Shown here piece after piece: positions 1 through 51,356 of a DNA stretch of 64,000 nt. The notes under the pieces are model-generated. The model saw only the letters and a program-made list of their open reading frames with translations. It had not been told where the DNA came from and did no database searches. The DNA lies in IMG/VR virus record IMGVR_UViG_3300042350_004528, positions 1 to 64,000 of that record; one strand, 5' to 3'. Made by a program: the position numbers and the translations under genes. Position 1 is the first letter of the stretch. Each line of letters opens with the position of its first letter.

Positions 1-14
1 TTTTAATTAGGGTA

Positions 15-46
15 CAAAAGTAATAAAGATTTTTTAAATAGTCAAG
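15..46 (-). promoter_or_regulatory. Bacteroidota-type -33/-7 promoter (CTTG-N20-TACTTTTG) for a gene beyond the left edge
   Basis: Matches the TTTG-N19-21-TAnnTTTG consensus; the same 20-nt spacer occurs at four other intergenic sites. Confidence 0.6.
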
Positions 47-404
47 TTTTTGGGCGTTTTTTTTTCAATTTTTTTTCAAACGCTACTTTAACCTCCTCAT
101 TTATAGAGTATAAGAGTCCACCATCTTTATCCACACCACTAGCTTCTATGATACCATCTTCAATTAAATCATTGAAAGTTTCACCAATTACGGTAAGTCT
201 AACAGATTTAACAGATTCATCAAACTGTTCTGAGGTTATCTCTGGGGTTTCAAGCTTTTTTAGGTTGTTGGTTGAGTGCTTTAAAAATTCATCGTACAAT
301 TTGTCAGAATCCATAAACGGATTTTCAACTTCATTAAAAAACCCCTCTTCATCAAGAAGTTTTATACAATTTTTACAGTAAATTACCGATTCAATATTAT
401 CCAT
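42..404 (-). CDS. hypothetical protein (120 aa)
   Basis: ORF on the dominant strand with a promoter immediately upstream. Confidence 0.75.
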   Translation of the reverse strand: MDNIESVIYCKNCIKLLDEEGFFNEVENPFMDSDKLYDEFLKHSTNNLKKLETPEITSEQFDESVKSVRLTVIGETFNDLIEDGIIEASGVDKDGGLLYSINEEVKVAFEKKLKKKRPKT

Positions 405-7516: not shown

Positions 7517-7930
7517 TTAAAATACCACTCCAAGTATGATTGTTAGTATAACCAATACCCCTCCACCTATAATAGCACCGTTTCTTTGGTTCTTTAACGT
7601 AGTGATGTTTTTATTCAAATCTTTTATTTCGGATTCCCTCTCCACAATCACACTAGATTTTAATTGAATTATGCTGTCTTTTCTGACAACTAAATTAGAA
7701 TAGTCTAATATAATGCTATCTTGTTCTAAGCCTTTTTTTGTTAGTATTGATATGGTATCTCTGGCAACCAATAATTTTGCCTGAGTTAATTTATAATCCG
7801 AACGCATAATTAATGCGTTTTTTAATGTGGCGCATGGTACCACACAATTTGTATCATTTAAAACTGTTTGTGAATTCCCTGGCAATATCTGTGTTAGACA
7901 TAGAATTAATACGATTAATATCTTTTTCAT
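7517..7930 (-). CDS. exported coiled-coil protein with C-terminal TM helix; spanin-like candidate
   Basis: Signal peptide ending GNS|Q, coiled coil, C-terminal hydrophobic helix; overlaps the upstream gene by 77 nt. Confidence 0.5.
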   Translation of the reverse strand: MKKILIVLILCLTQILPGNSQTVLNDTNCVVPCATLKNALIMRSDYKLTQAKLLVARDTISILTKKGLEQDSIILDYSNLVVRKDSIIQLKSSVIVERESEIKDLNKNITTLKNQRNGAIIGGGVLVILTIILGVVF

Positions 7931-8192
7931 GTTGTTTTTTCTCTTTATCTAATTTATTTTTTAACTGTGATAACTCAATTTCGTATACGGCAATTTTCTC
8001 GTTTCTTTTTTCAATTGATTTCTTTAATGAATCTGCAACAAGTTCTTGTTTTGTTATTTGAGTATTTAAAGAATCCACTTTTTTATCATAGTGTGATGTG
8101 TCGATCAAACCCTTATTATGGTTATCAATTGCTAAGTATATTATAATACCAACTAAAGCTAAAATTATAAGATATGGTACGTATTTTTTCAT
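7854..8192 (-). CDS. i-spanin (Rz-like) candidate
   Basis: N-terminal TM helix plus periplasmic coiled coil, near the amidase and holin candidates. Confidence 0.55.
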   Translation of the reverse strand: MKKYVPYLIILALVGIIIYLAIDNHNKGLIDTSHYDKKVDSLNTQITKQELVADSLKKSIEKRNEKIAVYEIELSQLKNKLDKEKKQHEKDINRINSMSNTDIAREFTNSFK

Positions 8193-8194
8193 AA

Positions 8195-8710
8195 TTAGCT
8201 ACCTTGGGTTAAAGAAACTAATTTATTTCGACCTATCTGATTATCCGAAAACGACCTAGATGCGGTTTGAATCAAATTTAACAAGTCTTGATCCAACGCT
8301 ATTGTACCAGATATAACCTCAATTTGCGGTTCATCTTCATTGGTATCAAAAACAATTGATTTAATTGAATCTGTTCCAGGGTTTTTAATTGTTTCGCTGC
8401 GCATAATTATACGACTATCTTCCACGTTTATAGAAATAGTATCAAGTAATAGCCCAGATGCTTTTATAAATTCACCAATAGCTGCGGTTAATGATGTTTT
8501 TATTTCATCAGATAAACCCTCCTGACTATTTAAATAGCCAACAGTGTTAATACCGTCAAATTTAATTTCATCACCCGATTTTGTGGTTTCCTCACCGTTT
8601 TGATTTTCATCATCCGATTTAAGATTTATGTCAACCATTTCAGCCTCCATTAAAGATCTAATTTTAGCTAGTGATTTTCTAATTTGATCGTTTTCGTTAA
8701 TAATATTCAT
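8195..8710 (-). CDS. hypothetical acidic protein (171 aa), possibly head-associated
   Basis: N-terminus MNIINE...IRSLME resembles the leaders of other head-like proteins here. Confidence 0.7.
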   Translation of the reverse strand: MNIINENDQIRKSLAKIRSLMEAEMVDINLKSDDENQNGEETTKSGDEIKFDGINTVGYLNSQEGLSDEIKTSLTAAIGEFIKASGLLLDTISINVEDSRIIMRSETIKNPGTDSIKSIVFDTNEDEPQIEVISGTIALDQDLLNLIQTASRSFSDNQIGRNKLVSLTQGS

Positions 8711-8711
8711 A

Positions 8712-9314
8712 TCAATTGTTTATTAGTTTAGTTAATTTTTCGAAGTCAAATGCTGGTGTCAAATCATAGTGATTTTTACTGAAATTACTTCTGTTGAGTA
8801 TTCCCTTGAAATTCATTGGTTTATGTGCAAGAACATTATTACCGATGAAATTTTTTTCAATTGAGTATTCTATACATAAATAGTTAATTAATTCAAATAG
8901 TACAGTCATTTGCTCATCAGTGTAATCCGCCCATAGCTTTTTACCACGCCAATTTGTTTCAATAACGGCGCCTTCATATCTAATTCCACGCCAATCTAAA
9001 TAAGCATCAGTTTTTTTGTGATATTCAAGCCACCCAACATTTTCTATCGCAATTGGTATAACAGCTTTATTTATATCATCTTTATCAAATAAGGGGCTAT
9101 AATTTTTGGGATTATAGTGTTGGTATAAAATACCAGACCTACTTATTGTGTAAGCTGGAATTTTATTGTATTTTTTATTAAATCTCAGTTTTAATTTTGT
9201 GATAAAGTCATCTATCGGATAACCAGTGTTTAACAAGACTATTTGTTTCTTATTTTGTCTTGTTTTAAACACTAAGCCATCATTAATTACAAAATCAGTG
9301 TTGATGTTCACCAT
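8712..9314 (-). CDS. N-acetylmuramoyl-L-alanine amidase (Amidase_2) homolog, apparently lacking its Zn-binding His residues
   Basis: YTISRSG.LYQ, IAIENVGW, WRG...W..YTDEQ...L..L and DLTPAFDF are present; the His ligands are replaced. Confidence 0.75.
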   Translation of the reverse strand: MVNINTDFVINDGLVFKTRQNKKQIVLLNTGYPIDDFITKLKLRFNKKYNKIPAYTISRSGILYQHYNPKNYSPLFDKDDINKAVIPIAIENVGWLEYHKKTDAYLDWRGIRYEGAVIETNWRGKKLWADYTDEQMTVLFELINYLCIEYSIEKNFIGNNVLAHKPMNFKGILNRSNFSKNHYDLTPAFDFEKLTKLINN

Positions 9315-9355
9315 CTTTAAAAACTCTTATAGTATCTATAAAGTTTATTGTTGGC

Positions 9356-9410
9356 GGTGTTTCGACTAACTCTGGTTGAATTTCCGTTGGTGTTTCGACT
9401 AACTCTGGTT
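9356..9410. repeat. 22-bp direct repeat x2 (GGTGTTTCGACTAACTCTGGTT), period 33 nt
   Basis: Copies at 9356-9377 and 9389-9410; encodes PELVETP twice in the -1 frame of the upstream gene. Confidence 0.9.
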
Positions 9411-9416
9411 CAGACG

Positions 9417-10157
9417 TTAGTTTTTTTTTTCGTCATCCTCAGTAGTTTGGATAACATCTTGAATAGTCTCTTGATCATTTAAAATTTCTGGTTCTATGAC
9501 CTCGCTTTGAGGTTCTATTTCATTTATTAATTCTTCTCTGTACTGCGAATTAGCCAATGCGGTTGGTTCGTCTGAATCGTTATAGTTTTCTTCTCCGTAT
9601 TTTTCAACATTATCTTTTCTAATTTTTTCAGCGATATCCCAAACTTTTTGATTAACCTTAACTTTATTTGATTCTACAAGTTTCTCATCAACCTGAGTCG
9701 GTTCAGTTACCTGTTCCTCATTTGGTTTAATATAATCAACGAGCGATTTAATAAAACCTAAAGCTACTAACGGTAAAATTGCGCCAGACACTATCGATAG
9801 AATTCTTTTTTGAAAAATCGGTTCTTCCTCAACCAAACCAAATAATTCAATCCACGATTGATAATTTTCTAGGTGAACATAGGCAAAATAAGTATTACCC
9901 ATTGCCTGCATGGCTGTTAAAACAAAAAATAACGCCCATACAATACCCTTGTTCATTTTTTGTAATGCTATAATTGAAGCAAGAGATGCTGCGGCACCAA
10001 CCTCAAACGCAATTGCTAAAGTGATTGCTAACCAGTCTGGATTAGATAGTTTGAAAAAATCAATTACGTGTATTGTTGATATGACGGATACCATCACATA
10101 TAGCAATACAAACGTACCTATTATAAAATTCCTGGTTAATTTATTCTCACCCTTCAT
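9417..10157 (-). CDS. 4-TM membrane protein with acidic tail; holin candidate; -1 frame extension to 9295 likely
   Basis: Four hydrophobic helices; directly upstream of the amidase; ends GAA AAA AAA AAC TAA. Confidence 0.6.
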   Translation of the reverse strand: MKGENKLTRNFIIGTFVLLYVMVSVISTIHVIDFFKLSNPDWLAITLAIAFEVGAAASLASIIALQKMNKGIVWALFFVLTAMQAMGNTYFAYVHLENYQSWIELFGLVEEEPIFQKRILSIVSGAILPLVALGFIKSLVDYIKPNEEQVTEPTQVDEKLVESNKVKVNQKVWDIAEKIRKDNVEKYGEENYNDSDEPTALANSQYREELINEIEPQSEVIEPEILNDQETIQDVIQTTEDDEKKN

Positions 10158-12234: not shown

Positions 12235-13032
12235 TTATAAGAGTTCAAATAATTCCTTAGAATAGAACCTTAATTTTTTAATCGCCTTTTCTTTTATCTG
12301 GCGAACACGCTCTTTTGTTAGGTTAAGTTCCTCAGATATATCCTGTAACGTCAAGGGCTCCCCATCTAAACCAAAATACTTGGTTACAACGTATTGCTCA
12401 GAATCCGTTAAATTAGATAAAACTATTTTAAGTCTATTAATTAACGAATCATGATCGTCAGAAAAAATCAAATCGGGTCTTTTCGAATTAACATCCTCAA
12501 TCACATCGTACATCGAATTACCTTCATCGTCAAAAGGTGCGTCTAAGTATGTTATTGTTGGTAAACCAAGAATACTGGTTGGTGTTTCGTTCTCGTCCGC
12601 ACTATACTCTTTTGGAGTCTCTTTGCGCAACTTATTCATTTCGTTAATAATGTTCACTGGTAGACGAATTGCCCTAGAATTTTCGTGTAAAGATTGCAAC
12701 ATACTTTGTTTTACCCACCAAACCGCATAAGAAAGGAATCTAACGTTGGTTTGGTCATAATTGTAGCGCTCTGCGGCTTTAATTAAACCATAATTACCCT
12801 CAGATATCAAATCAGATAATGATAAACCTTGATTCTGATATTGTTTTGCCATTGATATGACAAATCTTAAATTAGAATAAATTAACAAATCTTTCGACTT
12901 TTGGCATCCAGTTTTTATTTTATCAATTAGTTTAAATTCTTCCTCACGTGTTAGTGCTGGGTATTTTCTAACATCATAAAGGTAAAGATTAATTTCGGAT
13001 TGGTCAATCCAGTGCGAGGTATCTTTGATCAT
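12235..13032 (-). CDS. RNA polymerase sigma70 factor, RpoD/SigA family, Bacteroidota-like (no region 1.1)
   Basis: NLRFVISMAKQYQNQGLSLSDLISEGNYGL, SYAVWWVKQS, region 4 LTKERVRQIKEKA. Confidence 0.95.
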   Translation of the reverse strand: MIKDTSHWIDQSEINLYLYDVRKYPALTREEEFKLIDKIKTGCQKSKDLLIYSNLRFVISMAKQYQNQGLSLSDLISEGNYGLIKAAERYNYDQTNVRFLSYAVWWVKQSMLQSLHENSRAIRLPVNIINEMNKLRKETPKEYSADENETPTSILGLPTITYLDAPFDDEGNSMYDVIEDVNSKRPDLIFSDDHDSLINRLKIVLSNLTDSEQYVVTKYFGLDGEPLTLQDISEELNLTKERVRQIKEKAIKKLRFYSKELFELL

Positions 13033-47379: not shown

Positions 47380-47390
47380 CTCTATTTTTT

Positions 47391-48338
47391 TTAAAAATCA
47401 TCATCAAAAATACCATCTGTTGTAGTTGGAATATCCACTCTAGTGTATTGTCCTATTCTTTGTTCAAAGAAATTATTTTTAGCGGACAAACCAATTCTTG
47501 CCATGTAATCCAAAGGGTTGTTCGTATTAAACTCTGGTTCAATACCAAAGTCCTTTAAAACAACATCAGCGACATATCTAACATATTGTACCATCATGTC
47601 TGTTGTTAAACCCATAAGACCATTTGGCATACTTTCTCTAACAAAAACCTCTTCCACCTGGCAACAAGATAAAATAATTTCACGCACTTCTTCTTTTGGT
47701 AATTTGTTTGCAACGTAATTGTTATATAAATTAACCGCAAATTCGTAATGTAATGTTTCATCACGAATAATTAATTCATTCATACCCGCCAAACCCTCCA
47801 TTTTATTTCTTGAGCGGTACCAAAAAACTCCCGCAAAAACAGAACTAAAAGAAATTCCTTCAACACAAGCAAACGCGATCAATCTATGAACAAAAGATGG
47901 GTGGTTTATCCATTTTTCAGCCCAAGACGCTTTTGCGGCAACTGATGGGCTTGTTTCCATGGAATTAAATAAATCCATCTTTTCTTTCTCGTCTTTCACA
48001 TATGACTCAATTAAAAGTGAATAACCATTAGCATGGACTTGTTCAATAAACGTTTGATGCCCATAAAAATATTGAGCTTCAAGCAAATCAACCTCGTTCA
48101 TGAAGTTTGTGGCTAAATTATCAATTACTAATCCATCTGAAATGGCGAAGAACGCTAAAATGTTTTTTAGATATTGTTTTTCAGAATCAGTTAATTCATT
48201 GTATTTGTCCTTTGATAGGTCAACTTCTTCAGCTACCCAGGTTTGTTTTTCAGCTTTTTTATAAAACTCCCATAAATCTGGGTGAGTTATAGGGAAAATC
48301 GAATACCTTTTTGTTAAGTCGTTACTTTTTAAATTCAT
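47391..48338 (-). CDS. nrdB: ribonucleoside-diphosphate reductase beta subunit
   Basis: W..EEVDLSKD, EQVHANGY (radical Tyr), VEGISF, RDETLH, NFFE. Confidence 0.97.
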   Translation of the reverse strand: MNLKSNDLTKRYSIFPITHPDLWEFYKKAEKQTWVAEEVDLSKDKYNELTDSEKQYLKNILAFFAISDGLVIDNLATNFMNEVDLLEAQYFYGHQTFIEQVHANGYSLLIESYVKDEKEKMDLFNSMETSPSVAAKASWAEKWINHPSFVHRLIAFACVEGISFSSVFAGVFWYRSRNKMEGLAGMNELIIRDETLHYEFAVNLYNNYVANKLPKEEVREIILSCCQVEEVFVRESMPNGLMGLTTDMMVQYVRYVADVVLKDFGIEPEFNTNNPLDYMARIGLSAKNNFFEQRIGQYTRVDIPTTTDGIFDDDF

Positions 48339-50315: not shown

Positions 50316-51356
50316 TTAATTTTTCGTTTGTTCGTAAATTTTTTTTTCCTTGTTTATAATAGTAATAAAAGTTGACCAGAAAACAAAGAACCCGTCATCA
50401 TATTTTGGTAAAAAATTTAATAATTGGTCTTCTTTCATCATTTCCATAATCTTATTTATACCACCTCGACCTTCTGGCGACAATGGTTCGTTGACCATTT
50501 CCGTTATAGCATTTTTTAGGTCTTCTGTTACATTTGGCGTTTCTAAATTAATAACTTTACCCATAACACTAAAATAATCGGTACCATATGTCCCCCATTT
50601 CGTTTTACCCTCTTTTATTGTGAGAAGTTTTTTACTATCTGGGGATTCCGTTAATAACTCATCAACTCTGTTAATAACCCACTCATGATCTTTTGGCTCT
50701 TTTTTTAATTCAGGAAACATTTTAAGTACAGTTTCTTCACCTATCCCCTCAAGACCAGATATGTTATCTGATATGTCGCCAGCAATCATTTTAATCAACC
50801 CAACATTGGAATAGTGGTAATCAAAATAATTTTTGAAGTTGTCTTTATTGATGACAGCTTTTTTACCATACAAATACACCTTTGTATCTGGTGCAATCAA
50901 CTGAAGTAAATCTTTGTCGTTTGTGTAGATAATTTTGTTCTCATTTGATGAATTTTTAACATAATGAGCAATGCCATCATCAGCCTCGCAACCATCAATC
51001 TCAACTTGTCTTATAAACAATTCTTCAAGGTATTGTTTTATCCTGATTCTTTGTCTATCCAAGTCGTGTCGTTCATCAATAGTTACTTTATCATTCCTAT
51101 TCATTTTATAGTATGGATAGTAACCTTGACGGTAAACTTTTGAATTTTCACCCTCCCAGAAAACAACAACTTTGGTTATGCCAAAGTCCTGGTAAAATTT
51201 TTTGATTGTGTTAACAAAGTGAAATATGGCGCCAACGCTTCCGTGTTTAGTTTGCACTTGTTTGGCGCCATAAAACCCTTGTTTTAATAAAGCCTCACCA
51301 TCAATCAGTAACGTATTAATCTTCGTCCGAATAGGCAATGGCCTGTTTAACTTCAT
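50316..51356 (-). CDS. 5'-3' exonuclease / flap endonuclease (PolA N-terminal, T4 RNase H-like)
   Basis: LLIDG, YPYYK.NR, EADD, NDKDLLQL, GDISDNISGLEGIGE. Confidence 0.93.
   Translation of the reverse strand: MKLNRPLPIRTKINTLLIDGEALLKQGFYGAKQVQTKHGSVGAIFHFVNTIKKFYQDFGITKVVVFWEGENSKVYRQGYYPYYKMNRNDKVTIDERHDLDRQRIRIKQYLEELFIRQVEIDGCEADDGIAHYVKNSSNENKIIYTNDKDLLQLIAPDTKVYLYGKKAVINKDNFKNYFDYHYSNVGLIKMIAGDISDNISGLEGIGEETVLKMFPELKKEPKDHEWVINRVDELLTESPDSKKLLTIKEGKTKWGTYGTDYFSVMGKVINLETPNVTEDLKNAITEMVNEPLSPEGRGGINKIMEMMKEDQLLNFLPKYDDGFFVFWSTFITIINKEKKIYEQTKN

What the first reader, a model, noticed from the sequence alone, without database searches (positions are those of the whole stretch)
9295..9431. 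Probable -1 frameshift or transcriptional slippage extending the holin candidate
Seen: the gene ends G-A10-C-TAA, which contains the slippery heptamer A AAA AAC. The -1 frame continues for 41 codons (LTSEPELVETPTEIQPELVETPPTINFIDTIRVFKDGEHQH) to a TGA at 9295, overlapping the amidase start. This fills an unusually long ~100-nt gap. It also matches the Pro/Glu-rich composition of the upstream tail and contains a duplication with a 33-nt (codon-multiple) period, which suggests selection for coding. Established: X XXY YYZ heptamers promote -1 ribosomal frameshifting, and runs of 9 or more A promote RNA polymerase slippage. Inference: 246- and 287-aa isoforms may act like a holin/antiholin pair made by recoding, and only the long form would be translationally coupled to the amidase.
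Basis: partly seen in the sequence, partly recalled or inferred. Interest (0 to 1): 0.75.

Follow-up and report, generated by a model that had tools for sequence, protein, structure and literature searches.

The report
Conserved poly-A frameshift in phage gene
A run of ten A's at the end of a membrane-protein gene in a 299-kb lake phage is a conserved slippage site: it probably lets some of the product continue in the -1 frame, regain the family's usual C-terminal tail, and end just inside the neighbouring cell-wall amidase gene.

Summary
The gene at 9417-10157 (- strand) ends GAC GAA AAA AAA AAC TAA. The -1 frame is open for 41 codons with no start codon, and its TGA (9295-9297) lies 20 nt inside the amidase gene.

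Comparison shows this is a conserved recoding site, not an error.
- In 24 distinct related loci, an A9, A10 or A11 run (always preceded by G) sits 0-3 codons before the stop. In every one the -1 frame carries that clade's conserved C-terminal motif.
- 63 relatives have the same motifs in frame, and none has a lysine run there.
- No in-frame A10 or A11 occurs in 127 homologue ORFs.
- The exact 246-aa product is called on 19 contigs from four assembly sources.
- An A9 elsewhere in this genome reads in frame.
- The A-run state marks three clades that stay intact through deep divergence.

Neither a downstream nor an upstream RNA structure is conserved. Run length (at least 9) is conserved, but the last heptamer base is not. 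I therefore favour RNA-polymerase slippage (+1 A), with -1 ribosomal slippage as co-mechanism or rival.

The holin/antiholin reading is untested. The protein matches no known family and is unusually conserved for a holin. There was no direct RNA or protein evidence.

The parts
9417..10157 (-). 0-frame gene for the short isoform (246 aa). It has an N-terminal membrane domain with 3-4 hydrophobic helices (residues ~11-140) and an acidic tail (net charge -18).
   Evidence: The homologue family has 4559 hits and 881 clusters at 50% identity. There is no Pfam, PHROG or NCBIfam match.
9421..9430 (-). A10 run (T10 on the + strand), flanked by G (9431) and C (9420). This is the proposed slippage site.
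   Evidence: In 24 distinct related loci it is conserved as A9, A10 or A11, always preceded by G.
9420..9426 (-). Heptamer A AAA AAC in the X XXY YYZ phase of the 0 frame. This is the possible ribosomal -1 slip site.
   Evidence: In relatives the last base varies among C, T and G.
9417..9419 (-). 0-frame stop TAA, one codon after the run.
9433..9435 (-). TGA in the -1 frame just upstream of the run. Together with the 0-frame TAA it confines any frame change to the run.
9298..9420 (-). -1 frame extension of 41 codons with no start codon. It gives a 287-aa long isoform.
   Evidence: It is open and homologous in the 93% relatives L002 and L247, and identical in L246.
9307..9348 (-). Conserved C-terminal motif INFIDTIRVFKDGE within the extension. 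The family pattern is [IT]xF[LIF]xx[IV][KMR]VF..G.
   Evidence: The same motif sits in the -1 frame in 10 A-run lineages and in frame in L003, L005, L038 and L060. Variability by codon position is 0.32 / 0.29 / 0.48.
9295..9297 (-). TGA stop of the long isoform, 20 nt inside the amidase gene.
9356..9410 (-). Two perfect 22-nt direct repeats (9356-9377 and 9389-9410) with 33-nt spacing. They encode PELVETP twice in the -1 frame.
8712..9314 (-). Downstream gene, 200 aa, Amidase_2-like (probable endolysin). Its ATG (9312-9314) lies inside the K-D-G codons of the extension.
   Evidence: PF01510, E 1.7e-4, 22.4 bits, below the 26-bit cut-off. Orthologues in L236 and L240 carry an unmarked PF01510 hit.

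Best explanation
The A10 run is a programmed recoding site. Standard decoding gives a 246-aa membrane protein that ends ...DDEKKN. In a fraction of expression events the frame moves by -1 inside the run. The protein then continues for 41 residues (287 aa in total) and regains the conserved C-terminal motif that in-frame relatives carry. Translation ends 20 nt inside the amidase gene, where termination-reinitiation can couple amidase synthesis to the long form.

The most likely mechanism is slippage of the host multisubunit RNA polymerase on the T10 template, giving A11 mRNA. I put this at roughly 55% as the main route. A -1 ribosomal slip on A AAA AAA or A AAA AAC may contribute or be the alternative.

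Shown: the anatomy and its conservation. Inferred: that the long form is actually made, its proportion, the mechanism, and the coupling.
For: 1. In 24 distinct loci from viral and metagenome contigs, G-A9/A10/A11 lies 0-3 codons before the stop. In all 24 the -1 frame is open for 16-123 codons, and in the 23 whose extension is complete it ends in the clade's own conserved tail. The tails are ...VF.DG.....HPQIMPGV.. and ...PGTGNRYFKRG..G. The +1 frame closes quickly in all of them.
2. Among the top 120 protein clusters, 47 end right after the lysine run. Another 63 carry the VF or PGV tails in frame, and none of those has an internal KKK.
3. Across 127 homologue ORFs, 24 of 26 A>=9 runs sit at the frame break. 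No in-frame A10 or A11 occurs.
4. On a tree of the N-terminal domain, the A-run state forms three clades of 26, 17 and 4 clusters. At least three changes are needed, so the site is stable over deep divergence.
5. The tail motif varies most at third codon positions of the -1 frame: 0.32 / 0.29 / 0.48.
6. The 100-123-codon extensions of L019 (A11) and of L281, L284 and L309 (A9) align as proteins.
7. This is not an assembly error. The exact 246-aa product is on 19 contigs from NCBI, JGI, Logan and ENA, and relatives are on 8, 21 and 13 contigs. A Logan DNA contig reads A10. An A9 inside a 544-aa ORF of the same genome reads in frame.
8. No conserved hairpin lies downstream or upstream. Run length >=9 is conserved while the heptamer's last base is not. 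This pattern is expected for polymerase slippage. Precedents are Citrobacter tssM1 A11 (PMC4256274) and T. thermophilus dnaX and Shigella spa13 (PMC5009743).
9. The genome has a sigma-70-type factor and no RNA polymerase beta-subunit match. This points to host RNA polymerase.
10. The long-form stop overlaps the amidase ATG in all amidase-linked lineages.
Against: - There is no direct evidence that the long form exists.
- The one RNA-library contig (X25) covers 9257-9407 and stops short of the run. The raw-read DNA runs had no coverage.
- Between the window and its 93% relative, constraint on the extension is weak: pN/pS is about 0.45 from few sites.
- Part of the motif (K-D/N-G) is also constrained by the embedded amidase start codon.
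- Logan and assembly contigs drop minor variants, so low-level A11 DNA cannot be excluded.
- Every run of 9 or more A's also contains an in-phase A AAA AAA heptamer, so the comparative data do not separate transcriptional from ribosomal slippage.
Confidence: 0.78

Rival explanations
1. Purely ribosomal -1 programmed frameshifting on A AAA AAC (or A AAA AAA), with uniform A10 mRNA. The adjacent 0-frame stop may help by slowing decoding.
For: - An in-phase X XXY YYZ heptamer is present here and in all 24 loci.
- L011, L081 and L277 have A AAA AAG, the E. coli dnaX heptamer (PMC5009743).
- A stop follows within 0-3 codons.
Against: - No conserved downstream structure. Z-scores are mostly between -1.4 and +0.5, and the two folds near -2.8 are unrelated to each other.
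- No conserved upstream SD-like element or hairpin.
- The conserved feature is a run of 9 or more A's, longer than a heptamer needs.
- The heptamer's last base varies (C 11, T 7, G 6).
- In E. coli, A AAA AAC and A AAA AAA are far less shift-prone than A AAA AAG (PMC5009743).
Confidence: 0.25
2. Sequencing or assembly error: the true genome has A11 and a single 287-aa ORF.
For: Homopolymers are error-prone. One extra A would restore the frame here and in every related locus.
Against: - The identical truncated product is called on 19 contigs from four sources. Relatives are on 8, 21 and 13 contigs.
- No fused form appears among near-identical clusters.
- An independent Logan contig reads A10.
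- An A9 in a 544-aa ORF of the same genome is in frame.
- In-frame relatives have no A-run at all, rather than an A-run of in-frame length.
Confidence: 0.04
3. DNA-level phase variation: replication slippage makes a heritable mix of A10 and A11 genomes, so the long form comes from a subpopulation of phages.
For: A 10-nt homopolymer is mutable. Contigs report only the majority allele (notes).
Against: - Across 24 distinct loci and dozens of contigs, no assembly carries the in-frame length.
- The out-of-frame state persists through deep clades. That argues for selection on that state rather than free switching.
Confidence: 0.05
4. The extension is a dead remnant. An ancestral frameshift truncated the protein, and the downstream motif is kept only as the amidase's translation-initiation region.
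For: - The amidase ATG sits inside the K-D/N-G codons.
- Constraint is weak in the window-versus-L002 comparison.
Against: - The -1 frame stays open in all 24 loci, up to 123 codons, at about 7% stop frequency per random codon (base composition).
- The pattern is protein-like: motifs are kept through synonymous change, and third positions are the most variable.
- The same holds in clades whose downstream gene is not an amidase (L244, L245).
- The mutable A-run itself would not be preserved.
Confidence: 0.06

Closest known systems
Citrobacter rodentium tssM1 (and Yersinia pseudotuberculosis tssM): transcriptional frameshifting at an A11 run just before a premature stop (PMC4256274)
   Same: A long A-run sits immediately before the 0-frame stop of a membrane-protein gene. 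Added A's in the mRNA restore the conserved C-terminal part. The result is two length variants from one gene. No SD-like or structural stimulator is nearby.
   Different: That case is a bacterial secretion-system gene, with the mechanism and the need for both forms shown by experiment. This one is a phage gene of unknown function, supported only by comparison. Its extension is short (41 aa) and ends inside the next gene.
Shigella spa13 slippage with downstream effect on spa32 (reviewed in PMC5009743)
   Same: Slippage gives a C-terminal extension whose coding end overlaps the start of the next gene. The slippage influences that gene's expression.
   Different: The proteins are unrelated (type III secretion). 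Coupling here is inferred from a 4-20 nt stop/ATG overlap conserved in relatives, not measured.
Thermus thermophilus dnaX (A9 transcriptional slippage) and E. coli dnaX (A AAA AAG -1 ribosomal frameshift)
   Same: An A-rich slip site makes two isoforms with a shared N-terminus. The A9 length matches the shorter runs seen in this family.
   Different: In dnaX the shifted product is the shorter one. E. coli dnaX needs an upstream SD-like element and a downstream hairpin, and none is conserved here.
Phage C-terminal extension by -1 frameshifting: lambda gpG/gpGT tail chaperone (PMC5009743); T7 capsid 10A/10B (from my own knowledge)
   Same: A phage gene in which a minority of products are extended in the -1 frame.
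   Different: Those cases involve structural or assembly proteins with ribosomal heptamers of 7 nt. This is a membrane protein in a putative lysis cassette with a 9-11 nt homopolymer.
Lambda S105/S107 holin-antiholin (from my own knowledge)
   Different: Lambda uses dual start codons at the N-terminus, whereas here the difference is at the C-terminus. This protein belongs to no known holin family, has no dual-start motif, and has a far more conserved membrane domain than holins usually do.

Membership tests
Programmed transcriptional slippage sites (bacterial RNA polymerase type) | Homopolymeric A or T run about as long as the RNA:DNA hybrid (9 nt or more) on the coding strand | tested here: met
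   A10 at 9421-9430. Relatives have A9, A10 or A11 in 24 loci.
Programmed transcriptional slippage sites (bacterial RNA polymerase type) | The shifted frame encodes a conserved, functional continuation, and the run is conserved among relatives | tested here: met
Programmed transcriptional slippage sites (bacterial RNA polymerase type) | mRNA is heterogeneous in run length while the DNA is uniform | tested here: inconclusive
   DNA contigs are uniformly A10. The only RNA-library contig ends at 9407, before the run. The raw-read runs had no coverage.
-1 programmed ribosomal frameshift cassettes | X XXY YYZ heptamer in the 0-frame phase | tested here: met
   A AAA AAC at 9420-9426. An in-phase A AAA AAN is present in all 24 loci.
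-1 programmed ribosomal frameshift cassettes | Stimulatory element: a downstream hairpin or pseudoknot 5-9 nt away, or an upstream SD-like sequence | tested here: not met
   No conserved structure in 12 downstream and 10 upstream folds. Upstream sequences differ between lineages. No Rfam match.
-1 programmed ribosomal frameshift cassettes | A trans-frame protein is produced from unedited mRNA | not testable with these tools
   Needs mass spectrometry or reporter assays.
Holins | Small phage membrane protein with one or more transmembrane helices | tested here: met
   3-4 hydrophobic segments in residues 11-140. At 246/287 aa it is large for a holin.
Holins | Encoded next to the endolysin in a lysis cassette | tested here: inconclusive
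   True in this clade: an Amidase_2-like gene follows, then spanin-like genes. In other clades the downstream gene is an unknown 348-371-aa protein or an aminotransferase-like gene.
Holins | Sequence membership in a described holin family | tested here: not met
   No match in Pfam, PHROGs or NCBIfam. The only atlas lead is a weak one to DUF2637 (score 0.76).
Holins | Forms membrane lesions and sets lysis timing | not testable with these tools
   Needs expression and lysis assays.
Amidase_2 (N-acetylmuramoyl-L-alanine amidase) endolysins (downstream gene) | Match to PF01510 above the gathering score | tested here: inconclusive
   The window protein scores 22.4 bits against a 26-bit cut-off. Orthologues in L236 and L240 carry unmarked PF01510 hits. 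No sequence match in the PDB.

The most novel reading that the evidence does not exclude
Polymerase slippage on a conserved A9-A11 run acts as a built-in ratio-setter for a lysis module. It fixes the stoichiometry of tail-less and tailed isoforms of a membrane protein. Because only the tailed form terminates at the amidase start, it also meters endolysin translation. Lysis timing in a large clade of freshwater jumbo phages would then be tuned by transcriptional infidelity. The device arose or was lost at least three times in the family.
Probability: 0.25. Interest if true: 0.75.

Novelty: new member of a known kind. Interest (0 to 1): 0.6.

Why it matters
Recoding at homopolymers is well known, but nearly all documented phage cases are ribosomal frameshifts in tail chaperones or capsid proteins. 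Here a very mutable A9-A11 run has been kept at a frame break through deep divergence in a family of uncultured freshwater jumbo phages. The family has 881 clusters at 50% identity, and the site marks three clades with three different C-terminal tail types. No cultured member exists and I found no paper on it.

This has three consequences.
- It corrects the annotation. Dozens of database proteins ending ...EKKN are truncated calls, and the apparent 'intergenic gaps' after them are coding.
- It gives a clean natural series for asking what sets slippage efficiency: A9, A10 and A11, three flanking bases, and in-frame sister clades as controls.
- It offers a testable link between slippage and expression of the adjacent cell-wall amidase.

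Tried and rejected
The two raw-read DNA runs had no coverage of this phage. The RNA-library contig X25 covers only 9257-9407. There is therefore no test of run-length heterogeneity in DNA or RNA.
- Complex prediction with the amidase and the 41-aa extension peptide gave no verdict (score 0.00). This counts neither for nor against binding.
- Pfam, PHROGs and NCBIfam on the membrane protein and on 28 family members found nothing. The PDB sequence search of the amidase found nothing. Rfam found nothing relevant.
- The promoter and terminator scan found no site in the 9315-9416 gap on the - strand. The idea that the gap holds a regulatory element gets no support.
- Other homopolymer sites in the genome that looked like frame breaks are ordinary gene ends followed by the next gene's ATG. 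These include 50339-50347, 47385-47392 and 164088-164097. The genome is not riddled with homopolymer frameshifts.
- IMG/VR scans with P0011, P0047 and P0062 mostly returned loci already held. DNA for the A-run lineages had to come from the look-up of encoding contigs and the metagenome scan.
- Literature searches found no report of this family or of slippage in a phage lysis gene. GenBank phages hold one unannotated uncultured relative without the site.
- I did not build the fused 287-aa sequence for searches, because it cannot be given by reference.

Full report
**Observation**

The window is the first 64 kb of a 298,833-bp metagenomic virus record. The DNA comes from lake-water samples, and the genome is 34% G+C.

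On the - strand a 246-aa ORF (9417-10157) ends GAT GAC GAA AAA AAA AAC TAA. The A10 run is 9421-9430, flanked by G (9431) and C (9420).

- The -1 frame reads LTSEPELVETPTEIQPELVETPPTINFIDTIRVFKDGEHQH (9298-9420) and stops at TGA 9295-9297.
- That stop lies 20 nt inside the next gene. This is a 200-aa Amidase_2-like protein (8712-9314; PF01510, E 1.7e-4, below the cut-off).
- The extension has no ATG, GTG or TTG.
- A -1-frame TGA (9433-9435) sits just before the run, and the 0-frame TAA sits just after it. The run is therefore the only place where the frame could change.
- The 33-nt-period duplication is a perfect 22-nt direct repeat.
- The genome has only three A/T runs of 10 or more.
- Other apparent frame breaks at homopolymers are ordinary gene ends followed by the next ATG.

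**Is the extension coding? Comparative evidence**

The protein belongs to a large uncharacterised family. It has 4559 hits in the 90% clusters and 881 clusters at 50% identity. There is no cultured member; the only GenBank phage hit is an unannotated 462-kb uncultured phage.

Of the top 120 clusters:
- 47 end right after a lysine run (...EKKN, ...EKKNLN, ...EKKKL, ...EKKKD).
- 52 end with an in-frame ...I[MK]VF..G.. tail.
- 11 end with an in-frame ...PQ[IV][ML]PGV.. tail.
- None of the 63 in-frame proteins has an internal KKK.

I fetched DNA for the truncated forms. In 24 distinct loci:
- A G-A9, G-A10 or G-A11 run lies 0-3 codons before the stop.
- The +1 frame closes quickly.
- The -1 frame is open for 16-123 codons and, wherever the contig reaches its end (23 of 24; L296 is cut off), finishes in that clade's conserved tail.

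The tails are ...NF[LI]..I[KMR]VF.DG.. in the amidase-linked clades...HPQIMPGV.. in a second clade, and ...PGTGNRYFKRG..G in a third.

Across 127 homologue ORFs, 24 of the 26 A>=9 runs sit at the frame break. No A10 or A11 is ever in frame.

The motif region varies most at third codon positions of the -1 frame: 0.32 / 0.29 / 0.48. The 100-123-codon extensions of L019 (A11) and of L281, L284 and L309 (A9) align as proteins.

On a tree of the N-terminal domain the A-run state forms three clades of 26, 17 and 4 clusters. At least three changes are needed, two of them forced by well-supported branches. A highly mutable homopolymer has thus been held in the out-of-frame state through deep divergence. 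Sister clades make the same tail without it.

**Is it an error?**

- The exact 246-aa product is recorded on 19 contigs from NCBI, JGI, Logan and ENA. The 93% relative's cluster is on 8 contigs, all 246 aa. Two more distant A-run lineages are on 21 and 13 contigs.
- No fused form appears among near-identical hits.
- A Logan DNA contig matches the window exactly over 8712-10157.
- An A9 inside a 544-aa ORF of the same genome reads in frame.

A systematic loss of one A in every assembly of every lineage is very unlikely. I could not inspect raw reads. The two raw-read runs offered had no coverage, and the single read-laying run is spent. Minor DNA heterogeneity therefore remains untested.

**Mechanism**

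Both classical routes fit the anatomy.
- Every run contains an in-phase A AAA AAA/N heptamer.
- Every case needs a -1 shift, which is equivalent to one extra A in the mRNA.

Three observations favour polymerase slippage.
- The conserved feature is a run of at least 9 A's, which is the length of the RNA:DNA hybrid. A heptamer would need only 7.
- The heptamer's last base is free (C 11, T 7, G 6).
- Twelve downstream and ten upstream folds show no shared hairpin, and most z-scores are near zero. No conserved SD-like element lies upstream.

The same reasoning was applied, and then confirmed by experiment, for the A11 run before the premature stop of Citrobacter tssM1 (PMC4256274). In E. coli, A AAA AAC and A AAA AAA are much less shift-prone than A AAA AAG (PMC5009743).

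The genome encodes a sigma-70-type factor 2 kb upstream of this gene and has no RNA polymerase beta-subunit match. Host RNA polymerase is therefore the likely enzyme. The T7-type polymerase search was uninformative, because its control did not ring.

I put transcriptional slippage at about 55% as the main route, ribosomal -1 slippage at about 25%, and the non-recoding explanations together at about 15-20%.

**Consequence for the neighbouring gene**

In all amidase-linked lineages, whether A-run or in-frame, the long form's stop lies 4-20 nt past the amidase ATG. The ATG is embedded in the tail's K-[DN]-G codons. No SD-like sequence precedes it.

In A-run lineages the 0-frame stop lies 45-102 nt upstream. 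L236 is ambiguous: the script picked an upstream ATG (38 nt), while the gene caller's start gives the usual overlap.

Only ribosomes making the long form arrive at the amidase start. This is the arrangement described for Shigella spa13/spa32 (PMC5009743). The coupling itself is inference.

**What is the protein?**

It has 3-4 hydrophobic helices in residues 11-140 and an acidic tail with net charge -18. The genes around it look like a lysis cassette. The amidase follows, then a 112-aa protein with an N-terminal membrane helix and a coiled coil. That gene overlaps a 137-aa protein with a signal-like N-terminus and a C-terminal membrane helix.

'Holin' is not established, for four reasons.
- No known family matches. 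The only atlas lead is a weak one to DUF2637.
- The membrane domain has more than 60 invariant columns, including polar residues.
- Its dN/dS is 0.01 against a 93% relative.
- Other clades are followed by unrelated genes.

A test of whether the tail peptide binds the amidase gave no verdict.

**Verdict**

The finding is real. Its central interpretation, recoding at the A-run that extends the protein, is strongly supported by comparison but lacks direct RNA or protein evidence. It is a new member of a known kind (programmed slippage at a homopolymer). What stands out is its breadth and stability in an uncultured jumbo-phage family and its position in front of a cell-wall amidase. The holin/antiholin idea remains speculation.

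Noticed in passing
window 1-126, and genome G000 298689-298833 (outside the window): The last 145 nt of the contig are a copy of its first 126 nt followed by 19 nt, AATGATACGGCGACCACCG. From memory this looks like the start of an Illumina P5 adapter. The end of the record therefore contains non-phage sequence, and the 126-nt overlap suggests a circular or terminally redundant assembly.
   Followed up: partly
window 7517-8192 (- strand): Two genes overlap by 77 nt downstream of the amidase. One is 112 aa with an N-terminal membrane helix and a coiled coil (7854-8192). The other is 137 aa with a signal-like N-terminus and a C-terminal membrane helix (7517-7930). They look like a spanin pair, which would make 7517-10157 a lysis cassette.
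   Followed up: partly
window 9722-10157 (- strand), residues 1-145 of the membrane protein: The membrane domain is extraordinarily conserved. dN/dS is 0.01 against a 93% relative, with pS of 0.33. More than 60 columns are invariant across 28 diverse members, including the polar residues H30, E52, K67, N69, Q84, N88, Q116-K117-R118 and D141. This is unusual for a holin and suggests a specific binding or transport function.
   Followed up: partly
window 9257-9407: A 151-nt contig from a riverine metatranscriptome library (X25, depth 2) matches the extension and the amidase start exactly, but stops 14 nt short of the A-run. It may be RNA or carried-over DNA.
   Followed up: no
genome G000 76190-77126 (outside the window): A T9 run in the sense of the - strand (76422-76430) lies in the overlap of a 251-aa ORF and an 89-aa ORF. 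The second ORF has its own ATG upstream of the run, so this may be a plain overlap or a second slippage site.
   Followed up: partly
L019, L281, L284, L309, L313 (related loci): A third clade of the family has a 100-123-codon -1 extension after an A9 or A11 run. Its conserved blocks are SF.VYDKNTHQY.PAL, FND.VRI.VP and PGTGNRYFKRG. I saw no in-frame version of this tail among the fetched loci.
   Followed up: partly
window 12235-13032 (- strand): A sigma-70-type factor gene (regions 2 and 4) lies 2 kb upstream on the same strand. In several relatives it sits two genes before the membrane-protein gene.
   Followed up: no
L326 (LR756500.1 140250-143726): The only GenBank phage record with a homologue is a 462-kb uncultured phage. 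Its protein has a K/E-rich coiled-coil tail and no A-run, and an aminotransferase-like gene follows it. The link to an amidase is therefore clade-specific.
   Followed up: partly
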